From Camelus ferus (taxonomy: Eukaryota): 64,000 bases of DNA. The position numbers were made by a program, and so were the translations under genes. The notes beneath the pieces were generated by a model. The model saw nothing but the letters and a program-made list of their open reading frames with translations, was not told the origin of the DNA and searched no databases. Location of the stretch: contig NC_045721.1 of assembly GCF_009834535.1 (NCBI RefSeq), positions 14,446,001-14,510,000 on the forward strand, given 5' to 3'. Below are positions 7,476-62,200 of this stretch, piece by piece (the first letter of the stretch is position 1; every line of letters starts with the position of its first letter).

Positions 7476-7650
7476 NNNNNNNNNNNNNNNNNNNNNNNNN
7501 NNNNNNNNNNNNNNNNNNNNNNNNNNNNNNNNNNNNNNNNNNNNNNNNNNNNNNNNNNNNNNNNNNNNNNNNNNNNNNNNNNNNNNNNNNNNNNNNNNNN
7601 NNNNNNNNNNNNNNNNNNNNNNNNNNNNNNNNNNNNNNNNNNNNNNNNNN
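7476..7650. other. Assembly gap (175 N)
   Basis: Run of N; L1 sequence on both sides, and the gap size is compatible with the missing L1 segment. Confidence 0.99.
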
Positions 7651-16429: not shown

Positions 16430-16581
16430 CGTGAAGCAGCACGAGCGCTACGGCCAGCTGACCCTAGTCAACTCCACCGCGGCCGACACCGGCGAGTTCA
16501 GCTGCTGGGGGCAGCTCTGCACCGGCTACGTGTGCAGGAGGGACGAGGCCAAGACCGGCTCCACCTACATCTTCTTTACAG
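16430..16581 (+). CDS. PDGFRL: PDGFRL internal coding exon (152 nt; third coding exon by human numbering), Ig-like domain 1
   Basis: cgacag acceptor and g|gtaaaa donor; encodes (S)VKQHERYGQLTLVNSTAADTGEFSCWGQLCTGYVCRRDEAKTGSTYIFFT(E), matching recalled PDGFRL; has the Ig D-x-G-x-F-x-C motif. Confidence 0.96.
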
Positions 16582-16854
16582 GTAAAAGGTTTGCTCCCTA
16601 GCGGAACTCGTCACACTTCTGGGCTTGGCCCGTAGTAAAGGTTCCCACCATCTGCTGCCCATCAAGTAAGGACAATCAGGGCACTCTCTGTTGGCCAGTT
16701 ATCTCACGTAAGTCTCTCGCTAGCCCTTCTGGGTAAGTAGAATATCATTTCCTTTTTTCCCTCCCAGTGGGAAAGCTGAGGTTTAGAAAGATGAAGTCAG
16801 TCTTTCAGGTCCTACTGCACGTAAATGGCTGTACTGTCTGAGTCCAGTCTGTGC

Positions 16855-22260: not shown

Positions 22261-22940
22261 CGGGCTTCTCCTTCAGGCTTGACCAGCACTCAGGTTTTAA
22301 ATTAACCACAGGATGACATGCTGAGGGGCGACCTCCCCGCCAAGAACAGAGGCCACGGGGCTCAGAGACCACCTGTCTCTTTCGCTGCTGCAGCCTCGGC
22401 TCCCGGCACGAGGTTGCTTTGCCGTCAAAGTGACTTGAGTCCACTGAGCACAGTGAAGACTCTGGGCTCCGAAATGCGGGGAAGCACAGGCCCGCCCGCC
22501 ACCGTCCCTCCGCCGGGGGATTCAGACTTTCCCTTCCTTCTGAGGCCGCACAGTCACGTCCCTGTCTGCTCACCTTCACCCCTTCGGCCGCCCTCCCTTC
22601 CTTTCTCTTGCTCTGCCCCCCAAGTACCTTCTCCCTCGACCTGTTCCTTCCCTTCACGTGAGCTCCGGGCAGACCTTTTGGGCTCGTCTCCCAGTCACAG
22701 GCGTCACGGCTGGACTGGGGGGATCCGGGTGGCCACCCCGCTCTGGGCCGCCGAGGCGGGGTGGAGGCGTCTCAGGAGACCCCGAGTGGCGGACGGGGTG
22801 GGCCTGATGCTCGCCGGGACGCTGCAAGAACGGCAGGAGAGTTCCGCGTGTGCCCAAAGCGGGGAACACCACGCCTGCTGGCCTGTCTCTGCCGTGGGCT
22901 CACCGCGTTCACCCTCGTTCCGTCTCCTGCTCACTTCCAG

Positions 22941-23080
22941 TTCCCAGGGGCCCCCCGTCCACAACCATCTCGGCGTCGGCCAACAAAGTGAAAGGTGGGG
23001 ATGACGTCAGCGTCCTCTGCACTGTCCTTGGGGAGCCGGACGTCGAGGTGGAGTTCAGGTGGATCTACCCAGGGCAGAAG
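22941..23080 (+). CDS. PDGFRL: PDGFRL internal coding exon (140 nt), start of the C-terminal Ig-like domain
   Basis: cacttccag acceptor and aag|gtaggc donor; encodes (V)PRGPPSTTISASANKVKGGDDVSVLCTVLGEPDVEVEFRWIYPGQK. Confidence 0.97.
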
Positions 23081-24526
23081 GTAGGCGAGCCCGGTCTCGG
23101 TGGCTTCAGTTCCGGGCTCTTACCCCCCGCCCCCCGCCCCTGCGGTGATATGGACCGTAACTTAGCAAGTGTGAGAAAGGTGTGGGGCTAGGGTAGGGCC
23201 CGGGCTTGTTTTCTCATGAGATGCTTCAGTGTATCTACAAACAGCTTTTTTTTTTTTAACAGGACAGGAAAAAAGTGACTGGGTTCCATTACGCAATTCA
23301 GTCGACATACCCTCTTCATAACCCTTAGGGAAGGGGACGGGGCAGGGGGGGGTGCTCCTTTCTTCACCTGCAGCCTCAATCTCCAATCTTAATTCTGGGT
23401 TGCTTGGAGGCCAATCCAGCCTCCTTCTGGAACCTTCAGTGTTCTCTCTCCCCACAAGCTGGACCCTGGGGCTAGGAGCTCTGAGCCGATACTCACCAAG
23501 TGGGCATATAAGCCCAGGCCTTCAAAAAGGTGCTGTGAGGCCAGAGATCATTTTAAAATAGACTTTCCATGAAAAACAACTCCACCACATTTAGCCCCTG
23601 TGCCTTCTCATGAAAATAAACTGCTTGCTACCGGCATGGAATAGTCCGTTTGTTGCCAGAAGAGATTTGGCCTCCTAAGATGTACTCAGTAGCCAACACA
23701 CTTCTGGTTTAAGGGCTGGGATTGGTGGAAAATCTCTCCCTGGAGGATGGTACTTTCCTGGTACTAGGTACTTGTTTTCAAAGTGTCCCGTTTAGAAGAC
23801 ATTAATAATTTTTAGTGGAGGCTTTTTTTTTCCCACATTGTTAATTATGAGAAGCAGAAAGGGTATTATTAAGTAATACTATAAATATTACAATTATGTT
23901 AAACTAATCCAGAAAACACTACGTTCCAATAGTCAAAGTTGGAAAAAGCATCTCAAAAGTGACTTACTTTCTAGAAATAGGGGTTATGTCACCCAGCGTA
24001 TCATGTTATCTGTCCTCGGTACAGCCAGAGTCCATGGCACACTGGACTAATCGTGTGTCTCCCTCTCCCAAGTCTGAATAATTGGGAGGTCTTACTCATT
24101 TACGGTGAGTGCTAGGCGCCTCTTCTTGACTTTAAGTTTTGTGGATAAGAACCATTGAGCATAGGGGTGGGCAGTGTCAACAGGAGAGCAGTGGAAAATG
24201 TTATCCATCTTTTTATGTCTCATACCAGTCCCACATTCTTGGAGTTCCAAAAGAATAAAATGTATATATTAAGTAGAAACTTACTGAGGAAAATGGCAGC
24301 GCGAGAGAGCCACACAGCATAATGAAATTCAAGCCCCTGCTTGGAAAAAAATGCAGCCTCCACGGACGAGACAGTGGCAGGCCTCCCACGAGCTGCGCAT
24401 ACCAAGCAGTCCTTTAGAAGCATGTGTTTTTCACGTTGAAAGGGACACTCAGCAGCGTTCAGTGAATGGGAGCTGTTGAGAGTGGCTTGTGGTCTGCACT
24501 TCAGCCTGTGTGGTGTCGTTCGACAG

Positions 24527-25651: not shown

Positions 25652-27671
25652 TGTTGAATATTCCAGCATTATTTATTTGATCAGAGTAAAATACACTTTC
25701 CATCACTACAAACTGAGCACAACTACAGTTGTTTACACATCCGTATTTTTATGACGTGCCCACATTTTGCAACCTAAGTGAGACATTTGGTTTGAAAATA
25801 ATCTTAACATTCTGTTTTGTTTCCTATCTTCTCTCCTGTTGTCTCCCATTCTCTGAAGACATTTTATATTAATTGTGTAAGAATGATTTCCCCAGACACC
25901 TCAGTGGCACGGAGGACAGCAGGGAAAGTACCATGCTTAAGGGATGGATGGCAAACCCAACTCTGGCCAGTGACGTGGAGAACAACCTGGAAGGGTAAGC
26001 AGAGAGAGAGAGATTCCAGGGGGTGGCAGTGAACCTACGTTCCCATTTATCAGAAACAGACATGGAAGGTTACACACATAATAAACTGGTGAAGGTTAAG
26101 GACTTCAGACACAATCACTAGTAGAACAAAAACATTCATCAGGACTGTCAGTCTGCTACGTAGTGTACATGTAAGTGATGGCTCGAAGATCCACCTCTGG
26201 TGTCCTGAGTCTGTCCTTACTACAGGGGTTGTCTGTACAGCCGTCGAACGTCAGCAACGCCGAGTAGTAAATACTGAGCACAAGGTTGACACACGCAGGC
26301 AGAGGAAGAAAAAGCCATGGTTCTTCCTCCCTCCCCCCACCTCCCTGGAGTATGAGAACTGGGGGAGGGAATAAATGAAGTTTTGGAAAGAAACTGAAAT
26401 GCAACTTGGAGAAGAGTTGTATAAGCCACATTTCCCCTCGTCGGCTGACCACTCCGCCACCTTCCCAAGGACAGGAGGACTGTGTCAAGGTGCACGGTAA
26501 CTTAGTCTTATCTCGCCAGACTTGCTGTTCTGTTATCAAGGTGACCCTGCTCCTCAGTAAGCACTGAACCCTGTCTTTCTCAGTTCTGCCAGCCAGTGAC
26601 GACTCCTCATTCTTCCATCTCTCTAGGGTTTCCCAAAATTTGCACTATTGGATCCAGGCCTTGGTTTATTTGGAACGTGGCTCAGCACCCTGAAGATGCG
26701 CTGGCTCCGGAAAAGCATGTTCCTTGTCCCCGAGAAAAGCTGGAAGGAGGTAGAAGGTTGGCTTTTGTGGCACTGGAGGGGGGAGAAAGGAAAAGACAGG
26801 AAATGGGAATAGTGGGAGAGAAGACAGTTTAAATCACTGAGGATAGCTCAGATCAAGGTAAAAATAAGGCAGAAGGAATACCGTTGGTACTGCCCTTTCT
26901 TTATACAGATTTTTAACAGCAAAATTAGGATTCTACATATGCTTATAGCCTGAAGAAATGGACTGTAGTATTTTAGGTTCACATGGTAAGTTAAAAAAAA
27001 AAATCTAGCTAGTTTCAACTGACATGGCTGGACACTGAGAGGCTGCCAACAAGTTACTCCAAAAGGACGCAGAGGTGTAAAGTCAGAGCTCGCCCACGTC
27101 CACGGGCCGAGCCGAGGTGGTGGTAGAAAATCCTCATTCCAGCAACTACTGCTCTTCCCTCTATGGCTTTTGCAGAGATGCAGACACGGATTCTCACTGG
27201 ACCAGCACATCTCCAGAGGTTCTCAGCTCCTGACTCAATACCCAGCAAAAGAGGCAGCATCAGACACGTGACACTCGGTTACACCCATTTCATTCACACA
27301 TCCCCAGTCAGACCAAAATACACATCACAAGAAGGTGTCTGTGGTGAGGAACATTACAAAGGTTATATAAATCTTTTAACAGGCCCCTGAGAGTTTTCCC
27401 CTTTACGCGTAGGTGAAAAAGGCAACGAACAAGATCTCGTTCCGTAAGTGCTTTGTGCATCAGCGTCGGTCTGCGTAGATCCGTTCCGGCGACATTTTTC
27501 GGGCAGGGTCTCCCGGACCGAGTCCGGAGCCTCGCTCCTGAGTTCGGGTCTGTCTCAGAAGGAGCGGGTCCGGCCATGACGTTCCAGTTCCAGGGCGGGT
27601 GGGCGGGCGGGGCGCGTGGGCGAAGGGAGCTCAGCTTCCGCGCTGGCGAGGGGTCAGTCTGTCTCCAGGCG
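25652..27671 (-). other. MTUS1: MTUS1 3'UTR (about 2 kb)
   Basis: Lies between the TGA at 27672-27674 and the distal AATAAA; the 3' end is inferred. Confidence 0.7.
25672..25677 (-). terminator. MTUS1: MTUS1 distal poly(A) signal AATAAA
   Basis: Minus strand reads gtattttactctgatcaAATAAAtaatgctggaatattcaaca, with UGUA elements upstream; cleavage expected near 25652. Confidence 0.7.
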
Positions 27672-27885
27672 TCATCTGGGTGAGACGCTGGGGCTGGGGA
27701 AGGAGCCGGAGTTCCTCGGCGACTGGAAGGGGATGGCGGGGGACGTGGGCGACCTCTTGGGGCTGCACAGGTCCCCGTTGTGCAGTTTCCAGAGCAGCTC
27801 CTCATTCTCCATGGACAGCCGTTTGTTGACCTTGGACTCCTTCTCCAGCGACTCCTGCAGGACCGCCTGCTCGGTGGAAAGCTGC
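27672..27885 (-). CDS. MTUS1: MTUS1/ATIP last coding exon
   Basis: tcttccag acceptor; encodes (R)[70 protein letters not shown], the ATIP C-terminus. Confidence 0.97.
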
Positions 27886-28396: not shown

Positions 28397-28494
28397 CTTG
28401 AAATTGCCATGTGCTTGTCCATCCGAGCTTTTAATTCTTCGTTCTCCTGCTGGAATCGCTTCAGTTTGTCGACCAACGCCGTGTTGTTGTCCAC
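28397..28494 (-). CDS. MTUS1: MTUS1 coding exon (98 nt)
   Basis: gccaag acceptor and ag|gtaaaa donor; encodes [32 protein letters not shown](R); phase 0/2 fits. Confidence 0.95.
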
Positions 28495-30962: not shown

Positions 30963-31079
30963 CAGCTTCTCCATTTTCATTAACTTGACGTCCTGTTGGT
31001 GCAGTTTCTCATTCTTGATCTCTAACACAGCCTTGAGGCTTTCTAACTCTTGCTCCAGATACATCATCTGAGGGTTTTT
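30963..31079 (-). CDS. MTUS1: MTUS1 coding exon (117 nt)
   Basis: cttttccag acceptor and ctg|gtatgt donor; encodes [39 protein letters not shown]. Confidence 0.96.
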
Positions 31080-33449: not shown

Positions 33450-33545
33450 CAAATTTGCTTTCTCTCTTGATATTCTTTTTTGTTCTTCTGATTTCAGCTT
33501 TTCATTTAAAGCATCATTTTCACTCTTCAGATCACTGATTTGTTT
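33450..33545 (-). CDS. MTUS1: MTUS1 coding exon (96 nt)
   Basis: gtgttttag acceptor and ttg|gtaagt donor; encodes [32 protein letters not shown]. Confidence 0.96.
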
Positions 33546-33661: not shown

Positions 33662-33735
33662 CTCTAGTGATTCCTGCTGCTCGTAAAGCGAATCCTCAAG
33701 TGATTTCTTTTCTATTTCATGGGTTTTCTTGATTT
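33662..33735 (-). CDS. MTUS1: MTUS1 coding exon (74 nt)
   Basis: ctttccag acceptor and gag|gtaggt donor; encodes (E)IKKTHEIEKKSLEDSLYEQQESLE; followed by a 116-nt intron. Confidence 0.95.
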
Positions 33736-34746
33736 CTGGAAAGAAGTGATCAGTTTTGTGAGGCACTGAATTCTGCAGTCGTTCAAGCGTGTAGACATGA
33801 GGGTGGCTGGTGAAGCACTGTGATCACGGTGCTTGTGTGTGTTTGGCACTTTTATATACATCAAACCACGTGTTCTCAAATTAGCCCCATGAGGACAGTC
33901 GGGCAGATACTCCCATTTTATGAGTGAGAACACTGAGGCCCACAGAGCATGCCTCCCAGGGGGGGGGGGCCTGGAACACTGGCCTTGGCCGCCTGGCCCA
34001 CAGCCCCTGTATTCCTTCCAGCTGCTCTTCACGAACCAAACAGAAGTCTCAGACTAAACCCACCTCTAGCAGGAAGGAGGAACACTGTTTACCAGATGTC
34101 CACCCTGGGCCAGTCACCTCGACACGTTATCACTCTGACTTCACAAGGCAAGTGTTTTTCTGATGAGAAGGCCCTTGACAAAGGCCACAGAGCAGGTCTC
34201 AGCACACGTCCGCCCGCGTCTCTGCAGACGCCCTGGGTTCATGGGCACCTCCAGCTACGTGGGCAGTCACGTTCTGAGAAAAACGGCTTCTTACTCTCTT
34301 CCTTCTACTTCAACCCTGCCCCTCGTGATAGAATAACAACAAAGATTTTTTTTTTTATGAAGTACTGTCCTCATGTCACAGCGTGTCACTGTGTGAGAGT
34401 GTCAGGGGGCTCCTTCCCCGGGGTCAGGATGTGAGCTGCCACTCTCAACTTCCCAGGACCTCCCTGAAGTAGTCAGGCGTGACTACTACCAAAAAAGAAG
34501 GCCTGTAAGTTCCTTAAAAGTTCATCCTATTTCCTAGAAGGCTGGCATTTATAACAATTACTTGCATCCTTGGGGGAAAGGGCACCTGCTCGCAATGAAC
34601 CAATGCAAAAAGAACCCCAGACCCTCCACGCTGAACACCAAAGGGACTCCTCCAGAGCGAGATGTTATGAATCATTTCCGCTTCAAAACATAGCACGCTG
34701 TTCCATGAGATCTCACTCTATTTCAATACCAAAAAACCATTCTTGC

Positions 34747-34852
34747 CTGAAAGGGAAGTTTCATAGACTTTCTTTAGCAATTCTATTTTCTCCGAGTGGC
34801 TCGCTTCAATCTCCAACTTAGAGGTTTCATGGGCAGCGTTTAAGTTGTCAAA
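34747..34852 (-). CDS. MTUS1: MTUS1 coding exon (106 nt) with a GC donor
   Basis: tttctcatag acceptor; encodes [35 protein letters not shown](E); donor reads tcag|GCaaga. Confidence 0.92.
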
Positions 34853-36246: not shown

Positions 36247-36461
36247 CTGCTCCTGCAGCTGGGTTTTGTACTTCTCTGCTTCTTCGATGTAGATGTTCTG
36301 AAGCTTTTCGCACTCCCCAGTATAAAAGTCTTTAAGCCGGTTCTCCAGCTCTGTTAGATCAGTCTGGTGCTGCTGGTTTAGCTTCTGGACAAATCCTTCA
36401 TAAGCTATTTGCAGCTCATTCCTGGCTTTTTCTAACTTCTCACAGGTGGTTGAAGCAGTGA
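36247..36461 (-). CDS. MTUS1: MTUS1 coding exon (215 nt), coiled coil
   Basis: tcttttcag acceptor and cag|gttggt donor; encodes (V)[71 protein letters not shown]. Confidence 0.96.
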
Positions 36462-43835: not shown

Positions 43836-44735
43836 AAAAAGTGAATTTCTGGACTCCAGCCCAAGCTACCTGGGTCAGAACTGGGAATCTGCTTTTTATT
43901 CTGGCCTATTTTATCACACAATGAAGTTGGAGGACCATCGTTCTGGACAAATGACATGCAATCAGGAAAAACTGAACTTATCAAAACTGGACAAGTGAGG
44001 AAGAAGAGCAGGACGAGGAAGAAGACTCAAAAGGCGTTCAGAACAGACATGTTTGGAAATACTGTGCATCTATACTGGCGAGAGAACATGGCCTTTCACA
44101 CACACATACAGCAGCCAAAATCTAAATTGAGGACAGACAGACATGGATAGAAAAAAAATGAGCCAAGCCTAGGGTGGAATCGACCCCATCTTCAATCAGC
44201 TCAGTGAGACAGGGAATTCTGTCCTGGCACACAGTTGGTTTTCATTATGTTAATAGATGTTTCATTAAAGTCCATTTCAAAAATCATTTCTGGAATCCTG
44301 CAACTCGAAAGTGACTTGACTAGGCAGAGTTTTAATGTTACTCTAAATATACAACCTTGTTAAACCACACTGTACACAAAACCAGTGACAGAATTAACAC
44401 GTCCCATCAAGGTGTGTGGAAGCCTCAAGTTCACAGACACGGTGAAGTGTTGATTAGATGGTGTGCACACTGCCTTTTCCCTAGGAGATAATAACAAGAT
44501 GTTTTAGTCTAGTAATGCTTCTTGAACTCTTGATTCGAATAAAAAGATCCCAGAAGTAGTCATCAATGCAAACTAGTCTTTATACCAAATGATTCCCCGG
44601 TCTTTCAAACCGTTTCACGATGCTTTCCCTTTTGTGATCAGCAGTTTGGTGGTCTAGTCCGCCTGGATTTTTATCCAGGTGCTCTGCTTACTAGCTTACT
44701 GACCTTAAGAAGGTAACATAACTTTTAGGTCTTGA

Positions 44736-44780
44736 TTTCTTTCTTTCCTCTCTTTTCTCTTCTCTTTTCTCTTTCTTCCT
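44736..44780. repeat. CT-rich simple repeat inside a MIR fragment
   Basis: tttctttctttcctctcttttctcttctcttttctctttcttcct. Confidence 0.85.
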
Positions 44781-45029
44781 TAAATAAAATACAAACCAAG
44801 AGACTTAGAGATGAACCCTGATGTTAGGAAAGAGGAGGCACTCAATGAACGTGACCGCCATACTCATCATTTTTACACACAGAGCGCAAAATCAACTAGG
44901 TTTTTACATCATTATTATGGGAATTCCAGGAATTTCTGGTGAATTAAGGGTTAAAATCTCTTTTGTATCAGGACATAGAAACAATCAAGACAAATATATA
45001 TACATATAAATATGAGTTAGCTATTGATT

Positions 45030-48121: not shown

Positions 48122-50830
48122 AAACTGCAGACTTTACTTGGGTTTCAGTGCCTGAGATGATGATTTGTCCTTTACTCTTTGGGGAACCTTGTCTCAATTT
48201 TCATAGAGAAGGTAAAGAAAAATTAGTGGGAAAGTGACACCAGCGATTCCCCATCACGTCGTGGGGGAAAGGGGGAAGCCTGGATGGCACTGACAGGGGC
48301 AGCTCTCTTCTCTTGCGTTGCCTGGGCTGGACAGGGCTATACTGCTGCTCCGTATGCATCACTGTCTTACTCAAGCTTCATAACAATCCGACGAGATACA
48401 TACTAACTTTGTATCACCAGTGAGGAAACTATACTCAGAGAAATTAGGTAACTTCTAACCAGGAGCAGATGGACAGTGCAGCCCAAGCACTTCTCATGTT
48501 TCAGGAAGGGGCCCTCATGGCTCACTTTTCCATTCAAGTGGGAAGAGAAAAAACAGCCTGTCCCGGGGGACTTCTAATAATATTTAATAGTCTAATATTA
48601 ATAGTCCAGTTACTATTCCTTTCTGCAGTACAGTCTATGCCTTCACAAAACAGCAAGTGCGATTACTACGCAGCTGTAAACTGAACACATCTTAACACCT
48701 ACCATTTGGTAGCAGTTAATATTTGGTGGCAGACGCTTTGCAATGCATTACCTCATGTCATCCTCGTGGCCACCCTCGAGGCAGACAGTGACTACTGCCA
48801 TTTTACAGCGAATGGAACTGGGACAGAAGACGTGCAGTACGACTTGCCCTACGTAGGTCACCCGGCTACCGAAAATGTGAACCTGGACAGTGTGACCACA
48901 CAGTCAAACCACTTGGTACCACTGCCTCAGATGTTAAAACTGAGCTGTAAATGTTGCTACCTAAATCTGTTTATCTCCATGTCTGCCCATACGACAGTCA
49001 ATCAAGCTGGCAGCTTTGAGAGCATTCTTCCTGGACTGTTTCATCAGAAGAACAATTTAAAGGGCTTCTCTCCTCTTCCCTCATGGAACCAAAACCCTTC
49101 CCAAGACACTGTGCACAGTTACTTGAGCCATTCGATCTGATTGCACAGCAGTAAGGACACCCCTCCTGAGAGTCTAGCCGTGGGTGACTGAAGGGTTCGG
49201 ACAGGCCAACCGCTGCATCCTGGCACTGACCGCGCAGCAGTGAAGCCACACCGGGCACCCTCTCCTTATCACAGACGGGAAGGTAAGACTGGGCACAAAC
49301 TGCTACGGCGATTTCCTGTCGGGCTTAAAAGCGACCAAGAGGAGGTGCTAAGTACCCTGGGTCCAGCTGAAATCACTGGACCGCGCTCTCCACTATGAGA
49401 GCATCCCCCATTCAGACAGATTGAATGAGAAGTGTGTTCCCTCTGCGTGCTTCTGCCTTCTTTCGGGGAGAGGCTGAAACGTGAACCTCCAGGTGGACTC
49501 AGCTCCACCTCCACCAGGTTATAGTGAACCGAGAAACACACAAAAAAGGCCTCTTTCCTGATCTGCTAACCCTATATCCGTTACATTATTTAAGGTACAG
49601 ACAAAAGCAAAGGAAGTTGGCCACTTGGGTAATCAAAAGGGCGGCAGTCAAGTGAAGTAACCTGGCAGGGAGCCTTGCAGACTCTGAGAGCCGGGCTGTT
49701 TCTTATCTGTGGTTTCCCTGAACTGTTTTCCTGGAACTCTCAAGTCTTTGGGGTCCTGAGGTTCCATCTGTCTTAAAATTACTTTTCCATAAAGAGTCCT
49801 TCATCAGGTCGGCAGACCGTGGTGCCCCAGCCTGGGTATCACGAATCTGGAGGGGGAGCTGGGAGTTTGGCATCACCCCCATCAGGAGGTGAAAAGAGAA
49901 GACGGATCAAGAGACAAGTCCTGACTCCACATTCACTGCTATTTGACTTTGCCCTGAGGGGAAACAACTTAAAAGAGCTCAAGTTCAGCAAATTATACTG
50001 ACAGTGTTTAAACTCTGGTGTTGTCCAAAGTAAAATGAGCAGTTTCTCCTAGAACTAGAGGAACACGGATCTCATCTCTGGCTGTTGCGTTTGCGTTGTT
50101 TACACACATGCCTACACTCACTTTCAGCACAGACAGAAAGCCACAGAGAGCAAGGAACTCAGCCTTCCAGTGAACTGCCCAGCACCTGGCTGCGGGCGGG
50201 CTCCCAGGCAGCACTCCCTCCAGCACGGTGGCACCTTCCTGTTGCATGAACCTAGGACTCCTTCAAGGAGAGACAAGAACCAGAACAGAGTTTGGCACCG
50301 GGTGGCGGGTGCCACAGACATCAGAAGCACGTGGCTCTCTGTGGAACTGGGTCCTCACTCCCCATCAGGCCCAGTTCTAAGATGAGCACAGAACGTGCCT
50401 TCTTCAGGCAGTTACCCCTTCCAGTTTTGTACTCACTACTCACAAACCACCCCAAGGAAGCATCAGATAATTACTGCTGTCACACAGGGCATCTTCCCAC
50501 CACCCATTGATATGAAAAATGGTTCAGGAAAAAAAAAATTAACGGGAATCCACACAATTACAAAAACCATTCTGCCCCTCTCTTCAGGAAGAGAAACGTT
50601 TTGGTCATCAGAAGCTCTGCTGGGCTTACTCAGATCAGTGCCTGGAATTCTGTGAACTTGAGGGCAAGCTGTCAGGGTTCAAAAGCCACGTCCACAGTAA
50701 GTGTTTGCACAGATACTGGAGTGAGACAGCGTGCAACTCCAGCCACCATGCAGAGAGGAAAACCAAACTATCCAATTTTCCCCTCGTCCCATAAAACTTA
50801 ACAAAACAAACAAACAAAAAAGACTCTTAC

Positions 50831-50897
50831 CTAGCTCTCCCCGGAGGTTAACAAGTTCTTGAGATAGGGTTTTGTGTTGTCTCAGTGCTTCCTCCTG
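50831..50897 (-). CDS. MTUS1: MTUS1 coding exon (67 nt; 64 nt with the distal tandem acceptor)
   Basis: ttttccgcag|CAG|GAG acceptor and ctag|gtaaga donor; encodes QEEALRQHKTLSQELVNLRGEL(V). Confidence 0.95.
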
Positions 50898-51719
50898 CTG
50901 CGGAAAACACACATCAAGTTACTCATGTTTTCAAGAGGGTCCCTTTCAGTAAAACACACGTTCGTTATCACCAGGAAAATGAGACTCAGGATCTAGAAGC
51001 CAAGATATGAATCACTTAGGCTAACAGTCTGTGTTGTTAAAAAACACAGATGTCCCCTAGTTGTTAAGGAAATTCACGTTTCAAAAATCTGTCTTTTCTC
51101 AGGTCCTTGTGAAACTTTCACTGGAGGCACTGAACAGCCCATTTAAAAATATTTACTTTGAGCCAGGCTTCAATGCCGATCCCAGAACCTTCCAGCTACT
51201 GCATACTGCATTTAAGACGTAATGCATTCTCCCCCTCCAAGGGCAATAAAGGCCTATCAGTTTAAGATAAATATTTAATGTTCTACACATATGCACTTAT
51301 ATGCACTTTGTCCTGTATCTGCAAATAAAAAAGTTTCCTTACGAGGCCAAGCCTTTACTTCTAAAAGAAAGATGCAAAGTCTGTCACAAAGCCACGGCGA
51401 AAAAAAAATAATCCTTTAAAGACAAAATGAAATTAATTGTCCTCAGCTCCACATTATTTTCTAAGGATGATAATATGTTGGATCAGGTATAATTCTAAGG
51501 AGGTGTTAGAGAAACGAATCAAAGAAAACCAGGCAGCTGTTTCAGAATCAAAAAAGCAACTAGCAAAAGAGAACAATTTCCAAGTTACCAGCAACTCACA
51601 GCAAGCCCACATACACACACGAAGACAAATACAGCGATTAGATACAATTTTTTAAATGCAGATTCCCTACCACCGGGTTGTAAGGAAGGAAAAGGGCAGA
51701 ATTCAAAGCTCTCTGGAAA

Positions 51720-52200
51720 TGCCCTCCCTGGGGTCACCCAAGACGGAGCTCCCGCCGCATCCTGATCCAGCGTTGCAGAGATCCTGAGGCCGGCCTTTGC
51801 AGGCAAGAGTTGCTTGTCATTCAGAGCACTTCCCCCTAACGCCAGACATCCTCCGCCTTAGTCCCTGACATTCTTCCAGAAAAGGACTATAAGCAAATAC
51901 GAATTACCCTGGTTGCCGCACACGGAGAATAGAGGCACATTTTGCTGCCGGAGCAGCCCATTTTCCAGCTTCTGTCTCCAACTCCCCCCGCCCCCCGCAC
52001 CGGCCGAGAAGTGCACAGGTGGCCGCGCCACCCACCAGTCCGGTCCGGCTACATTCGCAGCGCGGCCAGGAGGCGCGCCATTGGCCCCGGGCTCGCCCTC
52101 CTCCGTCCTGCAGGTTACCGTTTGCCTCCGACGTCCCTCCGCACAGGAGCTGATGCTGCAGCTTCTGCCTCTGGCACCGGCGGCCTGCGATTACTTAAAG
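51720..52200 (-). promoter_or_regulatory. MTUS1: Intragenic CpG island, probable internal MTUS1 promoter
   Basis: Dense CpG in an AT-rich intron; on the minus strand a GC box GGGGGCGGGG about 30 nt upstream of the ATG at 51961 and CCAAT near 52080-52084. Confidence 0.75.
51908..51961 (-). CDS. MTUS1: MTUS1 alternative first coding exon, MGCSGSKMCLYSPCAATR
   Basis: Strong Kozak (gaaaATGG), 18 codons, donor agg|gtaatt in phase 0, in frame with the phase-0 acceptor at 50897; sits in the CpG island. Confidence 0.8.
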
Positions 52201-53344
52201 CCACAGCCCTTCATTTATGAAAAAAGAGAGCCAGGCATGCGACTGATCGATTGCCACTTACTTAAGTATCAGCTGGTACAGTGGAAGGAAAAACCGACCT
52301 CCTCAACGTGGATAATGGAGTTATTTTTAGATTTGTCAGCCTTTTTATTCCCTTCTCTAATTGAGGTCATTAGATTATCATACCTGCTAACAGAAGAGGG
52401 AAATTTGTTCTCCAAAACAAATTGAAGTGAGTTATGAACGAGGTGAAAAATGGGGAAAGTGTGGGTTGTGACTTAGAATTTAAAATGACATTGTAAAACA
52501 AATGGTGTTTCCCGGAAAACCTAATTGGAATGCTTAGAACGTGGTCCACTGGCGTTTTAAGAAGTGGTGTGACGTGCTGATTGGAAAGTTGGCGATCAGA
52601 TACGTATTTTATGATTTTTACTTTTTATTTTGCAGTAACCTCTCACTAAAGAGCTAAAGGAGTTAGTGACACACTGGACTGTCATGTGGACATTTAACAG
52701 TGACTGGAATTTAAGAAACACTTTCTCAATGGGTACATTTTGGCCTTAATGGTATTCAAAATGCTTGATTCTTAAAATGCAGTGTTAAGTTGTTCTGAAA
52801 TCACAAATCAGAGAGTCCAGGTTTCTAAAGTGATTAAGTAATGAGTTTTCTAATGTAGAAATTAAAGTTTGGATAAAAAGTTTACTTAAATGCAGTAGCT
52901 ACTGGATAAAACCGGACGAATATCAAATAAACATACATATGCTATATACTTCCTCTTAATCTCAAATTTAAGCGTCAATTTTGTCTCCTTAATAATCTAG
53001 TTCAAGTAAGTACTGGCAAGTTTTGTCACTAAAGTAACAAGAAACCAGAAGTCAGCTTTACTAGATACCCACAGGTGGCCTTGTGACACATTCGGTGACC
53101 TTGCTTAAATTCACTCTTTTCCAATAGTAAGCAGCTAAATTGCTAATAGAAGGAAAAGTTGGCAAGAAGATAAATCGTTTTTCAAATTTCCACAAATTTG
53201 AAAAATAAGAATTAAAAAATTATGTAGGTATATAATTTCCAGGAGTAATTTTATGAAAACCTTTACATTCTATCACAAATACCTACCAGGTGATCTTCCT
53301 GCTTATTAAAGGGCCTTTCAGGACAAGCAATTTCAGTACAATCA

Positions 53345-53508
53345 AAACCCAAGGTTGACTGAACCTGTGCTGCGGAGCCCGGGGCAGGCAAGGCCCACTG
53401 TACTACACCATTTTATGTGAGGGACTTGTGCCTCCATGGATTTTGGTATATGTTGTGGGGGGCGGTGGTTCTGGAACCAATCCCCCACAGATCCCAAGGG
53501 ACTACTGT
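53345..53508 (+). mobile_element. MER2/Tigger-like DNA transposon end
   Basis: ggattttggtat...ctggaaccaatcccccacagatcccaagggactactg resembles the MER2 terminus. Confidence 0.7.
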
Positions 53509-56500
53509 GCCCACATGGACATTTCCCTCAGCTCTACTGCCCTCAGCCTTCCTTGATGCCCAGAAGCCATCGATATCTTCCAACCTCTGTCAATGCCAGT
53601 GACAGTAACAGGAAAACCGTGAGGTCAGTTTGTGCTCGTCTTCATCTAAATGATTATGCCAAAGTCGGTCAGCTCTCCCTTCCTCACATGTCTTGAATCC
53701 ATTGCACTTTTTCTATGAGTGCTGCCTCTGCCCTGGTCCTGATACTTGCCAACCCTCCACATTATGGAAAGCCTCCCTCCACACCATCCTGCACAGGGCT
53801 GGTAGATTTTTATCCCATATTCTTGCCCTTCATCTGAGTGCAGTCTTCCACTGAGTGCATAAACAATAAACTTCCATGAATCTCAATCATCCAGCTCCTG
53901 TTTCGACTCCCAACTCCTCTTCTGTCCAAGTTGCTCGCCATGCATGTCACACTTCCCCAAGCTGGAATGCCTGGTCTTCTGTACCTGACCCATTTTACAT
54001 ACCTTCAGGGAACGCTAACTGTCAATCACAGATATTATCCCCTTTCCCCAGATGCCAAGGCAGGGCATTTATCCTTCTGAGTTGGTTGCCAAGTTATTAC
54101 CAACCAAAGTACCATTTAACCAAGAACCATTCCAGATGCTGGGAAAAATATGGAAAAAATTTAAGACATGTTTCTTGCTTCAAGAAGCTTGGGACCTGGG
54201 TAGAATTAAAACATCCAGGCCAATAACTGAAGGCAGATTACCTCATCTGAGGGGAAGCAGTACAGGATAATGGGAAAACCAAGGGCTTTAAACACAATCC
54301 TCTGTGAAATGCTGACCACGGTCCCCATACCATGCACACACGCAGCGTTCCTTTCTACCTGACTCCTGGTAGCTTGCCCTGTAAGACATTTACCCTTTAT
54401 CTGCAGACGACAAAATGCATTTTGTCACTCAGATATTGATTGCCTGTTTCTTTTTATTTAGCTGCTCCTCTATCAGTGTTTCTGTCTTAGATGATAAACT
54501 CTCTATTGTCCAGATAACAAGTTTATTTAATTCTCTTTGTTTATTTAATTCCCTTTGTGTTGTAACATGCAGAATTCCATACAATGTGAAAAAAGAGGGA
54601 GGTGGGAATCTGGATGGAAAAATGCTTTTATCCTCATGCATTAAATGTAGGAAGTGCCCCAAGGGGGGAAAAAAAAAGGATTCACCATAATTTAATTAGG
54701 AATCCCTGGGACACAGGCACTTAGTCTCTGGCTGTCGTCCCATCAGTGGGCCTGAACTGCCAGCTACCAAAGGGCATCAGCAGCACAGGGGATTATGCAG
54801 AAGAGAGCCACGTCAGGTGGCTCAGATGTGCGCCATCTCGGACCTCCTCCCCACCACCACGCAGTGAATCACAGCCACTGTTTTGGTTGTGAGACATTTT
54901 TACTTGTAACAGACTGCTAATGTCATTCAAAATTCATCTTTGTTTAGGTGCTACTTTAGGTTAGATTCCACTTTCAAAAACAGAATTGGAGGCTCACTGA
55001 ATAATTAGTCAGAGGTTTGGGGTGAGCGGTGACCTTGGTCCTGCTCACGTGTACCTAGAAATTCACCCACAGACACTTTTATGAAGAAATTGGGTATTGC
55101 CTCCATCAACACTGTCCTTCACTTGGTCTGTCTGTACAGAACACTGTACAATTATGCAAGGATAAGCCAAGAATTAGAACAAACTAAAACCAACAGTCGT
55201 GTGTCTTTTGAGAAACAGTCTGGTATTGGTTTCCAGATGCATGAGACACTCATCAGAACTTCTGCTATGTAATGAATGCCATCTGCCGCTACAGTGGGAA
55301 AGTTGTAGTTATTAAATGGACTCACAACCAAAGGATAAGTGAGAGTGGCTGGATTTCCTATAACCAACCATTTTTACCCATGATTTAATGCTCGGAAACC
55401 ATTTAGAAAAAGTCAGCAACAATAAGATCTTTATGTATATATAGATCAGTCTACATCTATAATCTACATTCTACCTGTCTATGTGTCTGTCTATCACTTC
55501 TGTAATGAGTATGCAAGAACCAAAGGGTTAAGTAAAAATTTGGAGGAAAAAAAAAAAAGGCCTAACTTTCCTCCTGGTTATGTCTTTCCTTTCCAACTGT
55601 TTTATAACCGTGCCCTGCATACATGAGGCAATCAGTAAATATTTGCCAATTGGTTATAAAGAGCAAAGAACATCGACATAAAGACTTTACATGCTCGTCT
55701 TACATCTGGGACCCCATCCCCCTCACCCGTCCGTGTGTTCACTGGGATACACTCTGTCTGACTGTCACGTATAAGGCACCGCCATGGCAGCCGGGGCGCC
55801 TTCCTAGGAACACACCAGACGCAGATCCTGCTCTCATGGAGCTTCCTGTCCTAAAGACTAAGAACAAGTGCGAAACGGCAATCTCCAAGGTAGAGGGTCA
55901 GAGAAATAAAAGTGCTCCTAGAACCCCGAGAGCAGACAGAACATAGAGCTAGAAGGACCAGGGAAGACTTCTTTTTAGAGCATTTGCAAGCTGAATTTTA
56001 AGAAATCCAATGGAGTCACAATTGCATGGGCCTTAGGACCTAAACTGAGTGTAAGATGAAATCCCCATGCAGTCCAAATACCCAAAAACTCATTGAGAGT
56101 TTGCCCTGCTGTGGACTGAAAAATCTTCTCTCAGTATGCCCAACTCGATGAATGTTTTTCTCTAGTGTTGGACCTAATCTTTCTCCAACTGAGCACCTGA
56201 TAAAATGTTTGGCTTGTCGTTAGGGGCCAAGTTGTATGGGAGGAAAGTATCTTTAAACACTAGGACCACATGGAGCGTGGAAGGGTCATGCCACGTGAGG
56301 TCCTGAGGGCCTGGGAACACAGCTGCAGGAAGAAGTCTCCTGTCCTCCACCCCACACCCACTCCCGGGCCTTTGCTCACTGAGAGGCATGGAAGGCAAGA
56401 CTGCCTCATCTATTTAATTTGCATTTTTAACTTTGATGGTTTGTATAATGGATCCATGTAAATTAAATCCAGGTAGTACTGTGATGCAACTACGAGAAAG

Positions 56501-59003: not shown

Positions 59004-59218
59004 CTCAGACAGCAGGTGCTGGATCACCACTGTTAACGCTTCCAACTTGGTATTACCACAGGAGAGAAGCTGCTTGAGCTGCACAATAAATCCACTTTGG
59101 TTTTCACATTTTGTTTTATACCGAGCCAACTCAAGTGTTTTTTCAGAGGACAGCACATCTGGAGACGTCTGGGTCTGGATACATAAACTCCTGGGATTCT
59201 TCTGCCTGCCCTTTTCAA
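59004..59218 (-). CDS. MTUS1: MTUS1 coding exon (215 nt), first exon common to the long ATIP isoforms
   Basis: ccttttgcag acceptor and gag|gtaagg donor; encodes (V)[71 protein letters not shown]. Confidence 0.96.
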
Positions 59219-62200
59219 CTGCAAAAGGAATTAATATAGGTAGGAAAATATGTGACTTTGACTTTTATAATCACCACCATCTGGGTTCACAAACGACTAG
59301 ATAAGCCACAGAAATGCACTTAAGTTATGTTTACGTAAGGAAAGCACATGGATGAGAACGGGGATTACTCAAACATCTAGATGTCTGGAATCCATAAACA
59401 CAGACGATGGCCTGAGCTCTGACTTATGAAGATTTATAGGGGGCAGAGTACTGGGGGCATGCAACAGATTTACTAATTCAGAAACATGAAAATTGTGTGC
59501 AAAGTAATGTGGATCTCACAGTTGTTAACTTTCCAGGTAGACTGACACAGAAACCGGATGGTGACAGGTACCCTGACTCTATCTTCCAATCACAGAGGCT
59601 GAAAAGCCACACAAATGATTGGACTTTAAGTGCCTTTCCCTCTTCCTACACTTTTCCTACCAACTTCCCATCCTTTTCCTGCCGATGGCCTGGTCCTTAC
59701 AAACATTTATACTATGGGTGAGTCATTTCCTAATCTCTAACAGATCATCACACGTACACTGAAGATCTACTCACATTTCACCCCCGATCTCTAATTTCAT
59801 TGCTAAGAGCATGATACTCTTGACAATACTATTCTGTTTTCTATCAAACACAAGCTTTGTTGTTTCTTCCCCTCCTTAAAGCAACACGGCTTTAAAATTT
59901 TTTGTTGTTTTTGTTTTAAGCACATGCTGATACTCCTGATCTATCTAAGATGCCACGCTAAGTGACTATTCCCTTTCTATGTCGTTGGTGCCCTGGGAAT
60001 CACTCTGCTCTATATTAAATGGGAAAATGGTTCTGTTTTGGAACCATTCCAAATGTCTCAGTCACTTTAAATATCAACAGAATTGGAAAAACAGGAAACA
60101 AGCTGCTTAGCTTCTTGAAATAAGTAGGCTAAACAAGCAAAACAAATCTCGATCTGAAGGGGGGAAAAAAACTACAAGAAACTAAAAAAAATAAATGTTT
60201 CTTTATTCTCACAGGCATTCCCCATGGCATCCACATTCTGTGGTGACAAGCAAACCAAGGACAACTTTATAAACAGTAATTATTTTCTCTAATTTTTTAG
60301 GAGGAAGAAAATAGTGATTTCTTAAAGCAAAGGAAAGAGACCTCAGCATTTGCGTTCTAAGATACAATGGCAAAATACACTCAATACAGACCTCCTGTTA
60401 AAAAAAAAGGAAAAAGGCTCTCATCTTCTATGGTAGCTCTCCATGGTTAAACAACTCATATTTGTATTCAAACTTGATAATTTTCAGTTCTAAGATGGCT
60501 TAATGAAAGGAGAAACTGTTTCACAACAATCGCCACTTCCAAAGCAGACAGAGATAGTAACCAAGTTCACAGGCATAATATTAAAGTCCTGAAAGGAGAA
60601 TGGCTTTATAGTCATGTATTAATGAAAAATAATCTACCTATTTTACAATTTACCCAAATATCTGAGATTAGTATTCCTTTATGTCATTTTCTAAAATTTT
60701 AAATGTTCCCAGGAATTATATTTGTCAGAGGACATATCATAATGACACGGTGTTTTACTGTTTATAGTGTTTTCTCACTTCCCCTCTCTGCGACCCTCCC
60801 GGTCACCCTCGGTAGGGAAGGTGGGGCCCAGGGATGGGAAGAGGCTACAAAGTCTCTGGGACAGACTCAGAGTCAGAACCGAGGCTTTGTTTCCACCCAT
60901 CCGGAAACTGGAGATGGGGTGGGGATGTGGTAACTAACTATAAACTTTTATGCAATACGCTTAACAAAATGTTACTTTAATTTATCTAAGCCTCTTATCT
61001 GATAACTTCATTTCAATAAACCTATATATGGATAAATACCTACATTTTATATATTTTATATAACTTGTGTGCAAACAGAAGAGCAAAAACCATCTTAACT
61101 CTTTAACTCTATCTAGAATGTACTGCAGCATAAACAGATTTAAGGTGACCTTCCTGACTGATACCACTGTTACATGTCCTACCAATACTTACTGAAATCT
61201 GTATTCATTTATTCTTCGTTTCTCTGAGTTTACCATGTCTTTAATTCTTATCAACATTTCATTCTCTTTCTAGAATTTCTATGCAAATCAATTGGATTAT
61301 TTAGCCCAGTATCAGTTTTTAAACTGTAAGGTTCTAATTATTTACAAAATCTGAGAGACGAATCTTCTATACGAACATTTTTGGAGAAACCATCCTTTAA
61401 GATTCTTGCCTACTTAGCCTCTCAGATGAAATTTAGTATTAACTAGTCACATTCTGTAAGTTATTTCTAAGGCAATAAATTAAACATAAATTAACTTAGT
61501 AAACACTGTTTTTTACACTCAGGTTCAGAATATAGGTACTTTTCCTGTAACACCAAAAATTTTTCATCAAATTATCTCTGATGCCAAAGTTAGGCAGTAA
61601 CTAAGTATGTTTGGCTCCTCTGTAAACTAAATTTTTTCACTGTATTACCAAGACTTTTTGAACTTACAAGGCTATAGGAAAGTATCTGGTTAGTAATACT
61701 GTTTGGCTAAATTCCTTGATTACATGTATCTAATACACCCTCCTTTATATTTTATTTATCCATTTTTCTTATTGAATGGTTAATTCCATCTCTAACATTA
61801 TCTTAAAGATAGGGAGATAGCCTTTTTTTTTTTTTCTTGGTTTAAGGAGATTAACTCTAGTGTTTCTCAATTGGCAGAAAGTAGATTTTAAAATAACATA
61901 TTTACATAACGCTAAGAATCTTTCAAAACTTTTTTTTTAAGTGTTTAAAAATTAAGAGTTGAATTAGGGTTGCAGCTAAGTGTTGGGGTGTCACCTCCGT
62001 CTAACTGGAGAAGTCAGGGAGGGAAAGCTACTGCTTCAGTAAAACCCAGACTGTCCGTGCGCCGCTGCCTCTCCTCTCAAGCTTTCTTCATGGCTGGAGA
62101 ACTGGAATTTCAGGAGTGGGGCCCCCCACACATCAGTATGGGTTCCTGTGCGTCCAGCTATGAAAAGCCCAGACACCACACCCAGAACTCAAACACCGCT

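What the first reader, a model, noticed from the sequence alone, without database searches (positions are those of the whole stretch)
51720..52200. Internal MTUS1 promoter whose first exon encodes a myristoylation/palmitoylation signal: a predicted membrane-anchored ATIP
Seen: a CpG island contains a strong-Kozak ATG (51961) opening 18 codons, MGCSGSKMCLYSPCAATR, that end at agg|gtaatt in phase with the exon at 50897. The joined CDS is 1041 nt (346 aa). Established: M-G-x-x-x-S-K is the N-myristoyltransferase consensus (G2, S6, K7 all present), and Cys3 next to myristoylated Gly2 is the dual-acylation motif of G-alpha-i, Fyn and Lck; Cys9 and Cys14 are further candidates. Described ATIPs are targeted by other N-termini (ATIP3 microtubule-binding, ATIP1 mitochondrial, ATIP4 transmembrane). 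Inference: this isoform lacks those domains, keeps the dimerising, AT2-receptor-binding coiled coil, and would be lipid-anchored at the plasma membrane or Golgi next to the receptor, or could sequester ATIP3. In-frame Met8 (aaaATGt) could give an unanchored form by leaky scanning. I recall a short human RefSeq MTUS1 variant starting in this intron but know of no work on its acylation; unverified.
Basis: partly seen in the sequence, partly recalled or inferred. Interest (0 to 1): 0.8.

Follow-up and report, generated by a model that had tools for sequence, protein, structure and literature searches.

The report
Lipid-anchor first exon of MTUS1
An internal start exon of the tumour-suppressor gene MTUS1 encodes a short signal for fatty-acid attachment that has been kept from fish to mammals, so a short form of the protein very probably sits on membranes; the form is already in gene catalogues, but I found no study of its lipid anchor.

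Summary
On the minus strand, a 300-bp CpG island (51900-52200) contains ATG 51961 in a strong context. It opens 18 codons, MGCSGSKMCLYSPCAATR, ending at AGG|gtaatt (51908/51907). These splice in phase to eight downstream MTUS1 exons, giving a 1041-nt CDS of 346 aa.

The exon is not a chance ORF and not new as an annotation. Predicted MTUS1 isoforms of 340-348 aa with this N-terminus exist in mammals, platypus, birds, snakes, frogs, coelacanth and teleosts. Assembled RNA contigs from a caecilian-like amphibian, a frog and fishes join the same exon 1 to exon 2 at the same codon.

In 39 distinct 18-mers, M1, G2, C3 and S6 are invariant. K/R7 occurs in 37, C9 in 38, and P13 and C14 in 34 each. The Cys and Pro codons vary synonymously. 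A teleost paralogue keeps G2/S6/K7 but replaces the cysteines with a polybasic run, the other classic second membrane signal. The paralogue CCDC69 is experimentally myristoylated and cortex-anchored.

The best reading is a myristoylated and palmitoylated, membrane-tethered short ATIP. Lipidation itself is untested, and I found no paper on it. Met8 leaky scanning is not conserved. The isoform lacks 67 residues of the common ATIP region, so AT2-receptor binding is unverified. Tetrapod leaders carry conserved upstream ATGs.

The parts
51962..52250 (-). CpG-island promoter and 5' leader of the short isoform. It includes a GC box at 51993.
   Evidence: GC is 0.68 and CpG observed/expected 0.86-0.91 over 51900-52200. 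Leaders of orthologous transcripts L001 and L002 align collinearly to about 52127.
52049..52081 (-). Upstream ORF 1 (MARLLAALRM*). Its last codon is a second upstream ATG at 52054, followed directly by TAG.
   Evidence: Both upstream ATGs lie at the same aligned positions in the caecilian-like and frog transcripts.
51908..51961 (-). Coding part of alternative first exon 1: MGCSGSKMCLYSPCAATR. The GT donor is at 51907-51906.
   Evidence: There are 39 distinct orthologous 18-mers with M1, G2, C3 and S6 invariant. The splice position is the same in 4 RNA contigs.
50831..50897 (-). Exon 2 (QEEALRQHKTLSQELVNLRGEL), the first exon shared with ATIP1/3/4.
36247..36461 (-). Exon 3, coiled coil.
   Evidence: It is 100% identical to camel P0125. 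It was the query.
34747..34852 (-). Exon 4. Its downstream intron is GC-AG.
33662..33735 (-). Exon 5.
33450..33545 (-). Exon 6.
30963..31079 (-). Exon 7.
28397..28494 (-). Exon 8.
27672..27885 (-). Exon 9, with the stop codon at 27674-27672.
59004..59234 (-). Upstream common ATIP exon (…VVIQHLLSE), used by ATIP1/3/4 but bypassed by the short isoform. It marks the 5' border of the intron that holds the internal promoter.

Best explanation
The region is a conserved alternative promoter and first exon of MTUS1, lying in the intron before the exon at 50897 in a camelid-like mammal. Transcripts that start in the small CpG island carry a leader of about 160 nt or more with two short upstream ORFs. 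Translation then starts at the strong ATG at 51961.

The 18 exon-1 codons splice in phase 0 to the eight 3' exons. The product is a 346-aa protein made of a short tail plus the MTUS1 C-terminal coiled coil.

Inferred mechanism:
1. Methionine aminopeptidase exposes Gly2.
2. N-myristoyltransferase adds myristate co-translationally. The motif is G2, small residues at 3-5, S6, K7.
3. DHHC palmitoyltransferases then acylate Cys3, and probably Cys9 and Cys14.
4. This gives stable anchoring of the coiled-coil rod at the Golgi or plasma membrane.

Shown here: the exon, the splice structure, its deep conservation, and residue-specific constraint on exactly the acylation residues. Inferred: the lipid attachment, the compartment, and the downstream effects, such as tethering or sequestering coiled-coil partners like other ATIPs, or keeping a microtubule-active domain at the cortex as reported for CCDC69.
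For: - Sequence anatomy and the 1041-nt CDS.
- CpG island.
- Annotated 340-348-aa MGC isoforms in mammals, monotreme, bird, snake, frogs, coelacanth and many teleosts.
- Contiguous RNA-derived Logan contigs of 1.6-3.6 kb carry the complete MGC CDS and map exon by exon onto the window. Examples are L001 148-203 to window 51965-51910 and L001 209-272 to 50894-50831.
- In 39 distinct 18-mers, M1, G2, C3 and S6 occur in 39 of 39, K/R7 in 37, C9 in 38, P13 in 34 and C14 in 34. All 39 satisfy the PROSITE PS00008-type pattern.
- Cys3, Cys9, Cys14 and Pro13 codons vary synonymously (TGC/TGT; CCG/CCA/CCC), while positions 4, 5, 8, 10-12 and 15-17 change amino acid.
- A monophyletic teleost paralogue (SH-aLRT 99) keeps MG..S[KR] but has no cysteines and a run of 3-8 K/R. 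One early-branching member has both cysteines and a KKKK run. This is the alternative second signal expected if membrane binding is what selection maintains.
- The paralogue CCDC69 is experimentally myristoylated on G2 and anchored at the cortex. It relocates on G2A mutation or treatment with the NMT inhibitor IMP-1088 (PMC11621681).
- From general knowledge, MGC…S-K resembles the SH4 motifs of Lyn and Yes and the N-termini of G-alpha-i/o.
Against: - There is no direct evidence of lipid attachment for any MTUS1 isoform. Searches for MTUS1 with myristoyl or palmitoyl found nothing relevant. MTUS1 was absent from the four myristoylome-type supplement sets I could read.
- There are no RNA or CAGE data for this species.
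- Mammalian support is gene-model annotation, not transcripts I could inspect.
- Two conserved upstream ATGs in tetrapod leaders may reduce use of the main ATG. In frogs the second is in frame and would bury Gly2 if used.
- Platypus has G7 and Arapaima has a shortened exon.
Confidence: 0.72

Rival explanations
1. The short isoform is real and conserved, but its N-terminus is not a stable lipid anchor. The conserved Gly and Cys residues would then serve something else, such as metal or redox chemistry, a protein-binding motif, a glycine N-degron, or only transient myristoylation without palmitoylation.
For: Lipidation is untested. Three spaced cysteines plus Pro13 (C3, C9, P13, C14) are conserved, which is more than a minimal SH4 motif needs. 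I found no MTUS1 entry in the myristoylome supplements I could read.
Against: The teleost paralogue loses all cysteines yet keeps G2/S6/K7 and gains a polybasic run. That is hard to explain by metal binding and is expected for membrane anchoring. The paralogue CCDC69 is shown to be myristoylated (PMC11621681). All 39 sequences fit the NMT pattern.
Confidence: 0.15
2. The transcript is made but is translated poorly, or from another start. The upstream ORFs would capture ribosomes, or in frogs the in-frame upstream ATG would be used. The lipidated protein would then be a minor product, and the promoter or RNA would matter more than the protein.
For: Two upstream ATGs lie at conserved positions in the window (52081 and 52054), in caecilian-like L001 and in frog L002. 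In frogs the second is in frame and gives the MWPDQFWLQCVLQE… extension in four gene models.
Against: Both upstream ATGs are in weak contexts (ctgcgaATGt; gggccaATGg has C at -3). The main ATG has A at -3 and G at +4 in all five species with DNA. Fish leaders have no upstream ATG. Residue-specific protein-level constraint with synonymous variation requires translation from this ATG.
Confidence: 0.09
3. The feature is a chance open frame in a CpG island that gene predictors have propagated, with no biological isoform behind it.
For: Most mammalian evidence consists of automatic isoform models.
Against: Independent RNA contigs from at least five species carry the complete spliced CDS (and the Logan rows). 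The exon is conserved across roughly 450 million years, with an identical splice phase and position.
Confidence: 0.02

Closest known systems
CCDC69 (short paralogue in the MTUS1/MTUS2/CCDC69 superfamily)
   Same: It is a roughly 300-aa protein made of a short N-terminal tail starting Met-Gly, followed by the same family of coiled coil (Pfam PF27558, MTUS1_CCDC69_CC2). Its G2 myristoylation is shown experimentally and anchors it at the cell cortex (PMC11621681).
   Different: It is a separate gene with a single promoter, not an internal promoter of a long gene. According to the paper its tail carries a basic NLS-like cluster at residues 15-18, which is more like the teleost polybasic MTUS1 paralogue. 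I could not test whether the two first exons are homologous, because no CCDC69 sequence could be retrieved. The CCDC69 paper compares CCDC69 only with ATIP3a, ATIP4 and TIP150, and does not mention a myristoylatable MTUS1 isoform.
SH4-type dual-acylation motifs of Src-family kinases (Lyn, Yes, Fyn, Lck) and G-alpha-i/o (general knowledge)
   Same: The pattern is Met-Gly-Cys with Ser at position 6 and, in Lyn and Yes, Lys at position 7. Myristate on Gly2 primes palmitate on Cys3 and gives stable membrane binding.
   Different: The cargo is unrelated: a coiled coil rather than a kinase or GTPase. The MTUS1 tail has two further conserved cysteines (C9, C14) and a conserved proline (P13). Acylation is not shown.
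Described ATIP isoforms ATIP1, ATIP3a/b and ATIP4 (PMC3566609)
   Same: They come from the same gene, use alternative promoters and first exons, and share the 3' exons and coiled coil. ATIP4 is also predicted to be membrane-bound.
   Different: Those isoforms share a 395-aa C-terminal region. The MGC isoform starts one exon further 3' and keeps 328 aa. Its anchor would be lipid, not a transmembrane helix (ATIP4), a microtubule-binding region (ATIP3) or the ATIP1 N-terminus.
Myristoyl plus polybasic membrane signals (Src, MARCKS; general knowledge)
   Same: The teleost paralogue clade (for example MGSRTSRAHHKPREAPPHRRKKKRKR) has G2/S6 plus a run of basic residues.
   Different: This applies to the fish paralogue, not to the window's exon, which has only 3 basic residues in its first 26 and no basic run.

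Membership tests
N-myristoyltransferase substrates (co-translational N-myristoylation) | Gly at position 2, directly after the initiator Met | tested here: met
   The exon starts ATG GGC at 51961. G2 is present in 39 of 39 distinct orthologues.
N-myristoyltransferase substrates (co-translational N-myristoylation) | PROSITE PS00008-type pattern G-{EDRKHPFYW}-x(2)-[STAGCN]-{P}, with Ser preferred at position 6 and a basic residue favoured at position 7 | tested here: met
   The window sequence MGCSGSK fits. All 39 distinct 18-mers fit. S6 is in 39 of 39 and K/R7 in 37 of 39.
N-myristoyltransferase substrates (co-translational N-myristoylation) | This ATG is the codon actually used for initiation | tested here: inconclusive
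   The context is strong (A at -3, G at +4) and conserved. However, two upstream ATGs lie in the likely leader, and there are no ribosome-profiling or CAGE data.
N-myristoyltransferase substrates (co-translational N-myristoylation) | Covalent myristate on Gly2 | not testable with these tools
   This needs metabolic labelling or mass spectrometry. No report was found.
Dual-acylated (myristoyl + palmitoyl) SH4-like anchors | Cysteine next to the myristoylated glycine (Cys3) | tested here: met
   C3 is in 39 of 39, C9 in 38 of 39 and C14 in 34 of 39. The Cys codons vary synonymously.
Dual-acylated (myristoyl + palmitoyl) SH4-like anchors | Thioester-linked palmitate, and membrane localisation that depends on it | not testable with these tools
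   This needs acyl-biotin exchange or acyl-RAC, plus imaging of C3S mutants. The literature search was negative.
MTUS1 / ATIP isoform family | Use of the common 3' exons encoding the C-terminal coiled coil (Pfam PF27558, MTUS1_CCDC69_CC2) | tested here: met
   Exons 2-9 map to camel ATIP1-type P0125 at 74-100% identity per segment, with five exons at 100%. Orthologues carry a precomputed PF27558 hit. The local Pfam copy lacks this model.
MTUS1 / ATIP isoform family | The full 395-aa common C-terminal region shared by ATIP1/3/4, said to hold the AT2-receptor-interacting domain (PMC3566609) | tested here: not met
   The isoform bypasses the exon at 59234-59004 and shares only residues 19-346, which is 328 aa. 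It is therefore a distinct, shorter class of ATIP.
CCDC69-like lipidated short members of the MTUS superfamily | A first exon homologous to that of CCDC69 (same phase, related MG… motif) | not tested
   The attempt to retrieve CCDC69 sequences with a 205-aa C-terminal query returned only MTUS1 and one MTUS2. All protein searches were then exhausted.
CpG-island alternative promoter | At least 200 bp with GC above 0.5 and CpG observed/expected above 0.6 | tested here: met
   The stretch 51900-52200 has GC 0.68 and observed/expected 0.86-0.91.
CpG-island alternative promoter | Transcription start sites inside or next to the island | tested here: inconclusive
   Orthologous transcripts L001 and L002 have leaders collinear with the window up to about 52127, with no upstream exon. 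There are no data for this species or for any mammal.

The most novel reading that the evidence does not exclude
The lipid-anchor first exon may be the ancestral N-terminus of the whole MTUS1/MTUS2/CCDC69 family, predating the vertebrate genome duplications. On this reading CCDC69 keeps only that form. MTUS1, and possibly MTUS2, keep it as an internal-promoter isoform; the Ascaphus MTUS2 short isoform starts MGQCC… and is Cys-rich. The lipidated short MTUS1 would work like CCDC69, as a membrane-parked coiled coil. By heterodimerising with ATIP3 or ATIP1, or by binding KIF2C-type partners, it would control how much microtubule-regulating activity is free in the cytoplasm. Translation would be gated by the conserved upstream ORFs.
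Probability: 0.35. Interest if true: 0.65.

Novelty: new member of a known kind. Interest (0 to 1): 0.5.

Why it matters
MTUS1/ATIP is a widely studied tumour suppressor. Work has focused on ATIP1, ATIP3 and ATIP4, and antibodies and probes against the shared C-terminus cannot tell the isoforms apart.

A short isoform with its own CpG-island promoter could be silenced or induced independently. An anchor motif kept invariant for about 450 million years suggests the isoform would place the dimerising coiled coil on membranes.

This may help interpret mixed reports on ATIP localisation. It may affect how the AT2-receptor interaction is read. It also gives the newly described myristoylation-dependent behaviour of CCDC69 a counterpart inside MTUS1.

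N-terminal tags would abolish the modification, so past overexpression designs would have missed it.

Tried and rejected
- **Orthologous promoters.** Genomic promoters could not be fetched. The look-up of encoding contigs holds only the longest product of each gene, so P0122 and P0233 were not on record. Promoter conservation therefore rests on transcript leaders only.
- **N-terminal search.** A search restricted to the N-terminal 40 residues found only 8 cluster representatives, because most MGC isoforms sit inside clusters of longer isoforms.
- **CCDC69 and MTUS2 retrieval.** I tried a 205-aa C-terminal query with a length window that excludes long isoforms. It returned MTUS1 fragments and one MTUS2, so first-exon homology with CCDC69 remains untested.
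- **Literature.** Searches for MTUS1 with myristoyl or palmitoyl, and four sets of myristoylome-type supplementary files, gave no mention of this isoform. The key predicted-myristoylome paper (Castrec 2018) is not held, so the isoform may appear in proteome-wide prediction lists I could not see.
- **CCAAT box rejected.** The CCAAT at 52084 is not a conserved promoter element. Only the overlapping ATGG is conserved.
- **Met8 rejected.** Met8 is not a conserved alternative start.
- **Other features near the island.** There are no Rfam families in 49000-55000 and no plausible plus-strand gene at the island.
- **ATIP1 and ATIP4 first exons.** They are not in the window.
- **Pfam.** The local Pfam library lacks PF27558, so one search gave only noise.
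- **Earlier findings of this scan.** Nothing was found.
- **Structure prediction.** It was not run. A monomeric coiled-coil model would not bear on lipidation.

Full report
**1. What is in the sequence**

The feature is on the minus strand. ATG 51961 sits in ggaaaATGg and opens ATG GGC TGC TCC GGC AGC AAA ATG TGC CTC TAT TCT CCG TGT GCG GCA ACC AGG. This reads MGCSGSKMCLYSPCAATR and is followed by gtaatt. The stretch 51900-52200 has GC 0.68 and CpG observed/expected 0.86-0.91. The whole window averages 0.45 and 0.37, and this is the only such island in the upstream half of the gene.

The next exon begins at 50897 behind ttttccgcag and reads QEEALRQHKTLSQELVNLRGEL. I located the remaining exons by their coiled-coil translations and splice sites. 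A Camelus bactrianus ATIP1-type protein maps onto exons 2-9 at these borders, and five exons are 100% identical, so the window is camelid-like.

The common ATIP exon ending …VVIQHLLSE lies upstream at 59234-59004. The MGC exon therefore sits in the intron between that exon and exon 2. The short isoform bypasses that common exon. The ATIP1 and ATIP4 first exons are outside the window.

**2. Is it real?**

A HMMER search of 1.8 billion representatives with exon 3 gave a handle on the family. Word-indexed searches then returned many MTUS1 isoforms of 340-348 aa that start MGC.
- Mammals: Sorex, Echinops, Thomomys, Nannospalax, Aotus, Macaca, Hylobates, Pongo, Pan.
- Other tetrapods: platypus, Numida, a snake, several frogs.
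- Fishes: coelacanth and about 25 teleosts.

The ESM Atlas holds a 151-member cluster with a 342-aa representative. Most of these are automatic gene models.

The Logan entries are different. They are contiguous ORFs on assembled read contigs of 1.5-3.6 kb, so they are spliced RNA. I fetched four. L001 groups with a caecilian in the tree, and L002 is a frog. Both map onto the window exon by exon. For L001, 148-203 matches 51965-51910, 209-272 matches 50894-50831, and the matches continue through exons 3, 7, 8 and 9. The exon 1-exon 2 junction falls after codon 18 in all five species with DNA.

The leaders of L001 and L002 align collinearly with the window for about 160 nt upstream of the ATG, to about 52127, without any further upstream exon. 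This supports an internal start of transcription rather than a cassette exon. An in-frame TAG at 52051 and the absence of a credible acceptor point the same way.

**3. What is conserved**

Among 47 sequences (39 distinct 18-mers) the counts are as follows.

| Position | Residue | Count out of 39 |
|---|---|---|
| 1 | M | 39 |
| 2 | G | 39 |
| 3 | C | 39 |
| 6 | S | 39 |
| 7 | K or R | 37 |
| 9 | C | 38 |
| 13 | P | 34 |
| 14 | C | 34 |
| 18 | R | 33 |
| 8 | A/L/M/V/Q/E/P/S/I | not conserved |

All 39 fit the PROSITE myristoylation pattern.

At the DNA level the constrained residues vary synonymously: TGC/TGT at Cys3, Cys9 and Cys14, and CCG/CCA/CCC at Pro13. The positions in between change amino acid. 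The constraint is therefore on the peptide, not on promoter DNA.

**4. A natural experiment**

Eight teleost sequences start MG but have Ser or Ala at position 3. Seven of them have no cysteines, and all carry a run of basic residues just before the exon junction. An example is MGSRTSRAHHKPREAPPHRRKKKRKR. One early-branching member, MGSSGSKACLKSLHCDKKKKAKR, has both cysteines and a basic run.

I built a tree from the shared C-terminal 322 residues only. In it these sequences form one clade (SH-aLRT 99), sister to the acanthomorph Cys-type clade. This indicates a gene duplicate in which the second membrane signal changed from cysteines to a polybasic patch while G2/S6/K7 stayed. Myristate plus palmitate, and myristate plus basic cluster, are the two established ways to make myristoylated proteins bind membranes stably (general knowledge). 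This replacement is what selection for membrane anchoring predicts, and other roles for the cysteines do not predict it.

**5. Precedent in the family**

CCDC69 is the short paralogue of MTUS1 and MTUS2. It has a conserved myristoylation motif on Gly2. It sits at the cortex, and it moves to the nucleus or cytoplasm with G2A, with the NMT inhibitor IMP-1088, or with any N-terminal tag. The authors propose that anchoring protects the microtubule network from its depolymerising activity (PMC11621681).

That paper aligns CCDC69 only with ATIP3a, ATIP4 and TIP150. It does not mention that MTUS1 itself has a CCDC69-sized isoform with its own motif.

A short MTUS2 isoform also exists, as a 349-aa Atlas cluster. 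The one species I could read, Ascaphus, starts MGQCCRK or MGQCCCN followed by LYYCCHC. This is a lead only.

**6. Mechanism**

Shown:
- the promoter-like island;
- the exon and the splice pattern;
- conservation specific to the acylation residues.

Inferred:
- Met removal;
- NMT-dependent myristoylation of Gly2;
- DHHC-dependent palmitoylation of Cys3, and possibly Cys9 and Cys14;
- tethering of the coiled-coil dimer to the Golgi or plasma membrane.

I put about 0.8 on myristoylation, about 0.65 on palmitoylation and 0.72 on the overall statement.

What the anchored rod does is open. It might recruit or sequester other ATIPs through the shared coiled coil, or act near the AT2 receptor, or restrain a microtubule activity as in CCDC69. 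The isoform keeps 328 of the 395 common residues said to carry the AT2-binding domain (PMC3566609), so receptor binding should not be assumed.

**7.

Met8 is not conserved, and the main ATG is strong, so an unanchored leaky-scanning form is not a conserved design.

The tetrapod leader holds two upstream ATGs at conserved positions:
- Window: 52081 opens MARLLAALRM*, and 52054 is ATG followed directly by TAG.
- Caecilian-like L001: the equivalent ATGs open an 8-codon and a 26-codon upstream ORF.
- Frog L002: the second ATG is in frame with the main ORF. This explains the MWPDQFWLQCVLQE… extensions in four frog gene models.
- Fish leaders: no upstream ATG.

This suggests translational gating in tetrapods, and it is the main caveat on how much lipidated protein is made.

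**8. Novelty**

The exon and the isoform are already in gene catalogues. The kind of anchor is textbook, and a paralogue is experimentally validated. I found no paper addressing acylation or localisation of this MTUS1 isoform. I could not see the large predicted-myristoylome tables.

I therefore file it as a new, well-supported member of a known kind. It is of moderate interest because the gene is much studied and the hypothesis is directly testable.

**9. Other checks**

There are no Rfam hits in 49000-55000 and no credible plus-strand gene at the island. The masked N run at 7476-7650 was left untouched.

Noticed in passing
window 52049-52081 (minus strand); L001:37-150; L002:10-137: Two upstream ATGs lie at conserved aligned positions in the leader of the short isoform. 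In the window they give a 10-codon uORF (MARLLAALRM*) whose last codon is itself an ATG followed directly by TAG. In frogs the second upstream ATG is in frame with the main ORF and gives the MWPDQFWLQCVLQE… extension seen in gene models. Fish leaders have no upstream ATG.
   Followed up: partly
window 34746-34747 (minus strand): The intron after exon 4 has a GC donor (TCAG|gcaaga), so it is a GC-AG intron. The reading frame and the camel protein mapping require this junction.
   Followed up: partly
proteins P0057, P0280, P0299, P0301, P0302, P0309, P0323, P0367 (teleosts): A monophyletic teleost MTUS1 paralogue has a first exon that keeps MG..S[KR] but replaces the cysteines with a polybasic run. 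One member is intermediate, with both cysteines and a KKKK run.
   Followed up: yes
proteins P0344, P0363 (Ascaphus truei MTUS2, 344 aa): The short MTUS2 isoform starts MGQCCRK or MGQCCCN followed by LYYCCHCQDK, a Met-Gly start with a very Cys-rich tail. The Atlas has a 103-member cluster of 349-aa MTUS2 isoforms. This suggests the lipid-anchor exon may be shared by the whole family.
   Followed up: partly
window 16301-16600, 22651-23100, 27451-27800: Further CpG-rich patches (GC at least 0.6, observed/expected at least 0.75) lie downstream of, or just 3' of, the MTUS1 stop codon. Their meaning (3' UTR, neighbouring promoter or repeat) was not examined.
   Followed up: no
window 44694-44823 (minus strand): A purine-rich low-complexity stretch inside the long intron is open in all three minus-strand frames (KEKREEKREE-like translations). 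It looks like a simple repeat, not an exon.
   Followed up: no
window 7476-7650: A run of 175 N (masked or an assembly gap).
   Followed up: no
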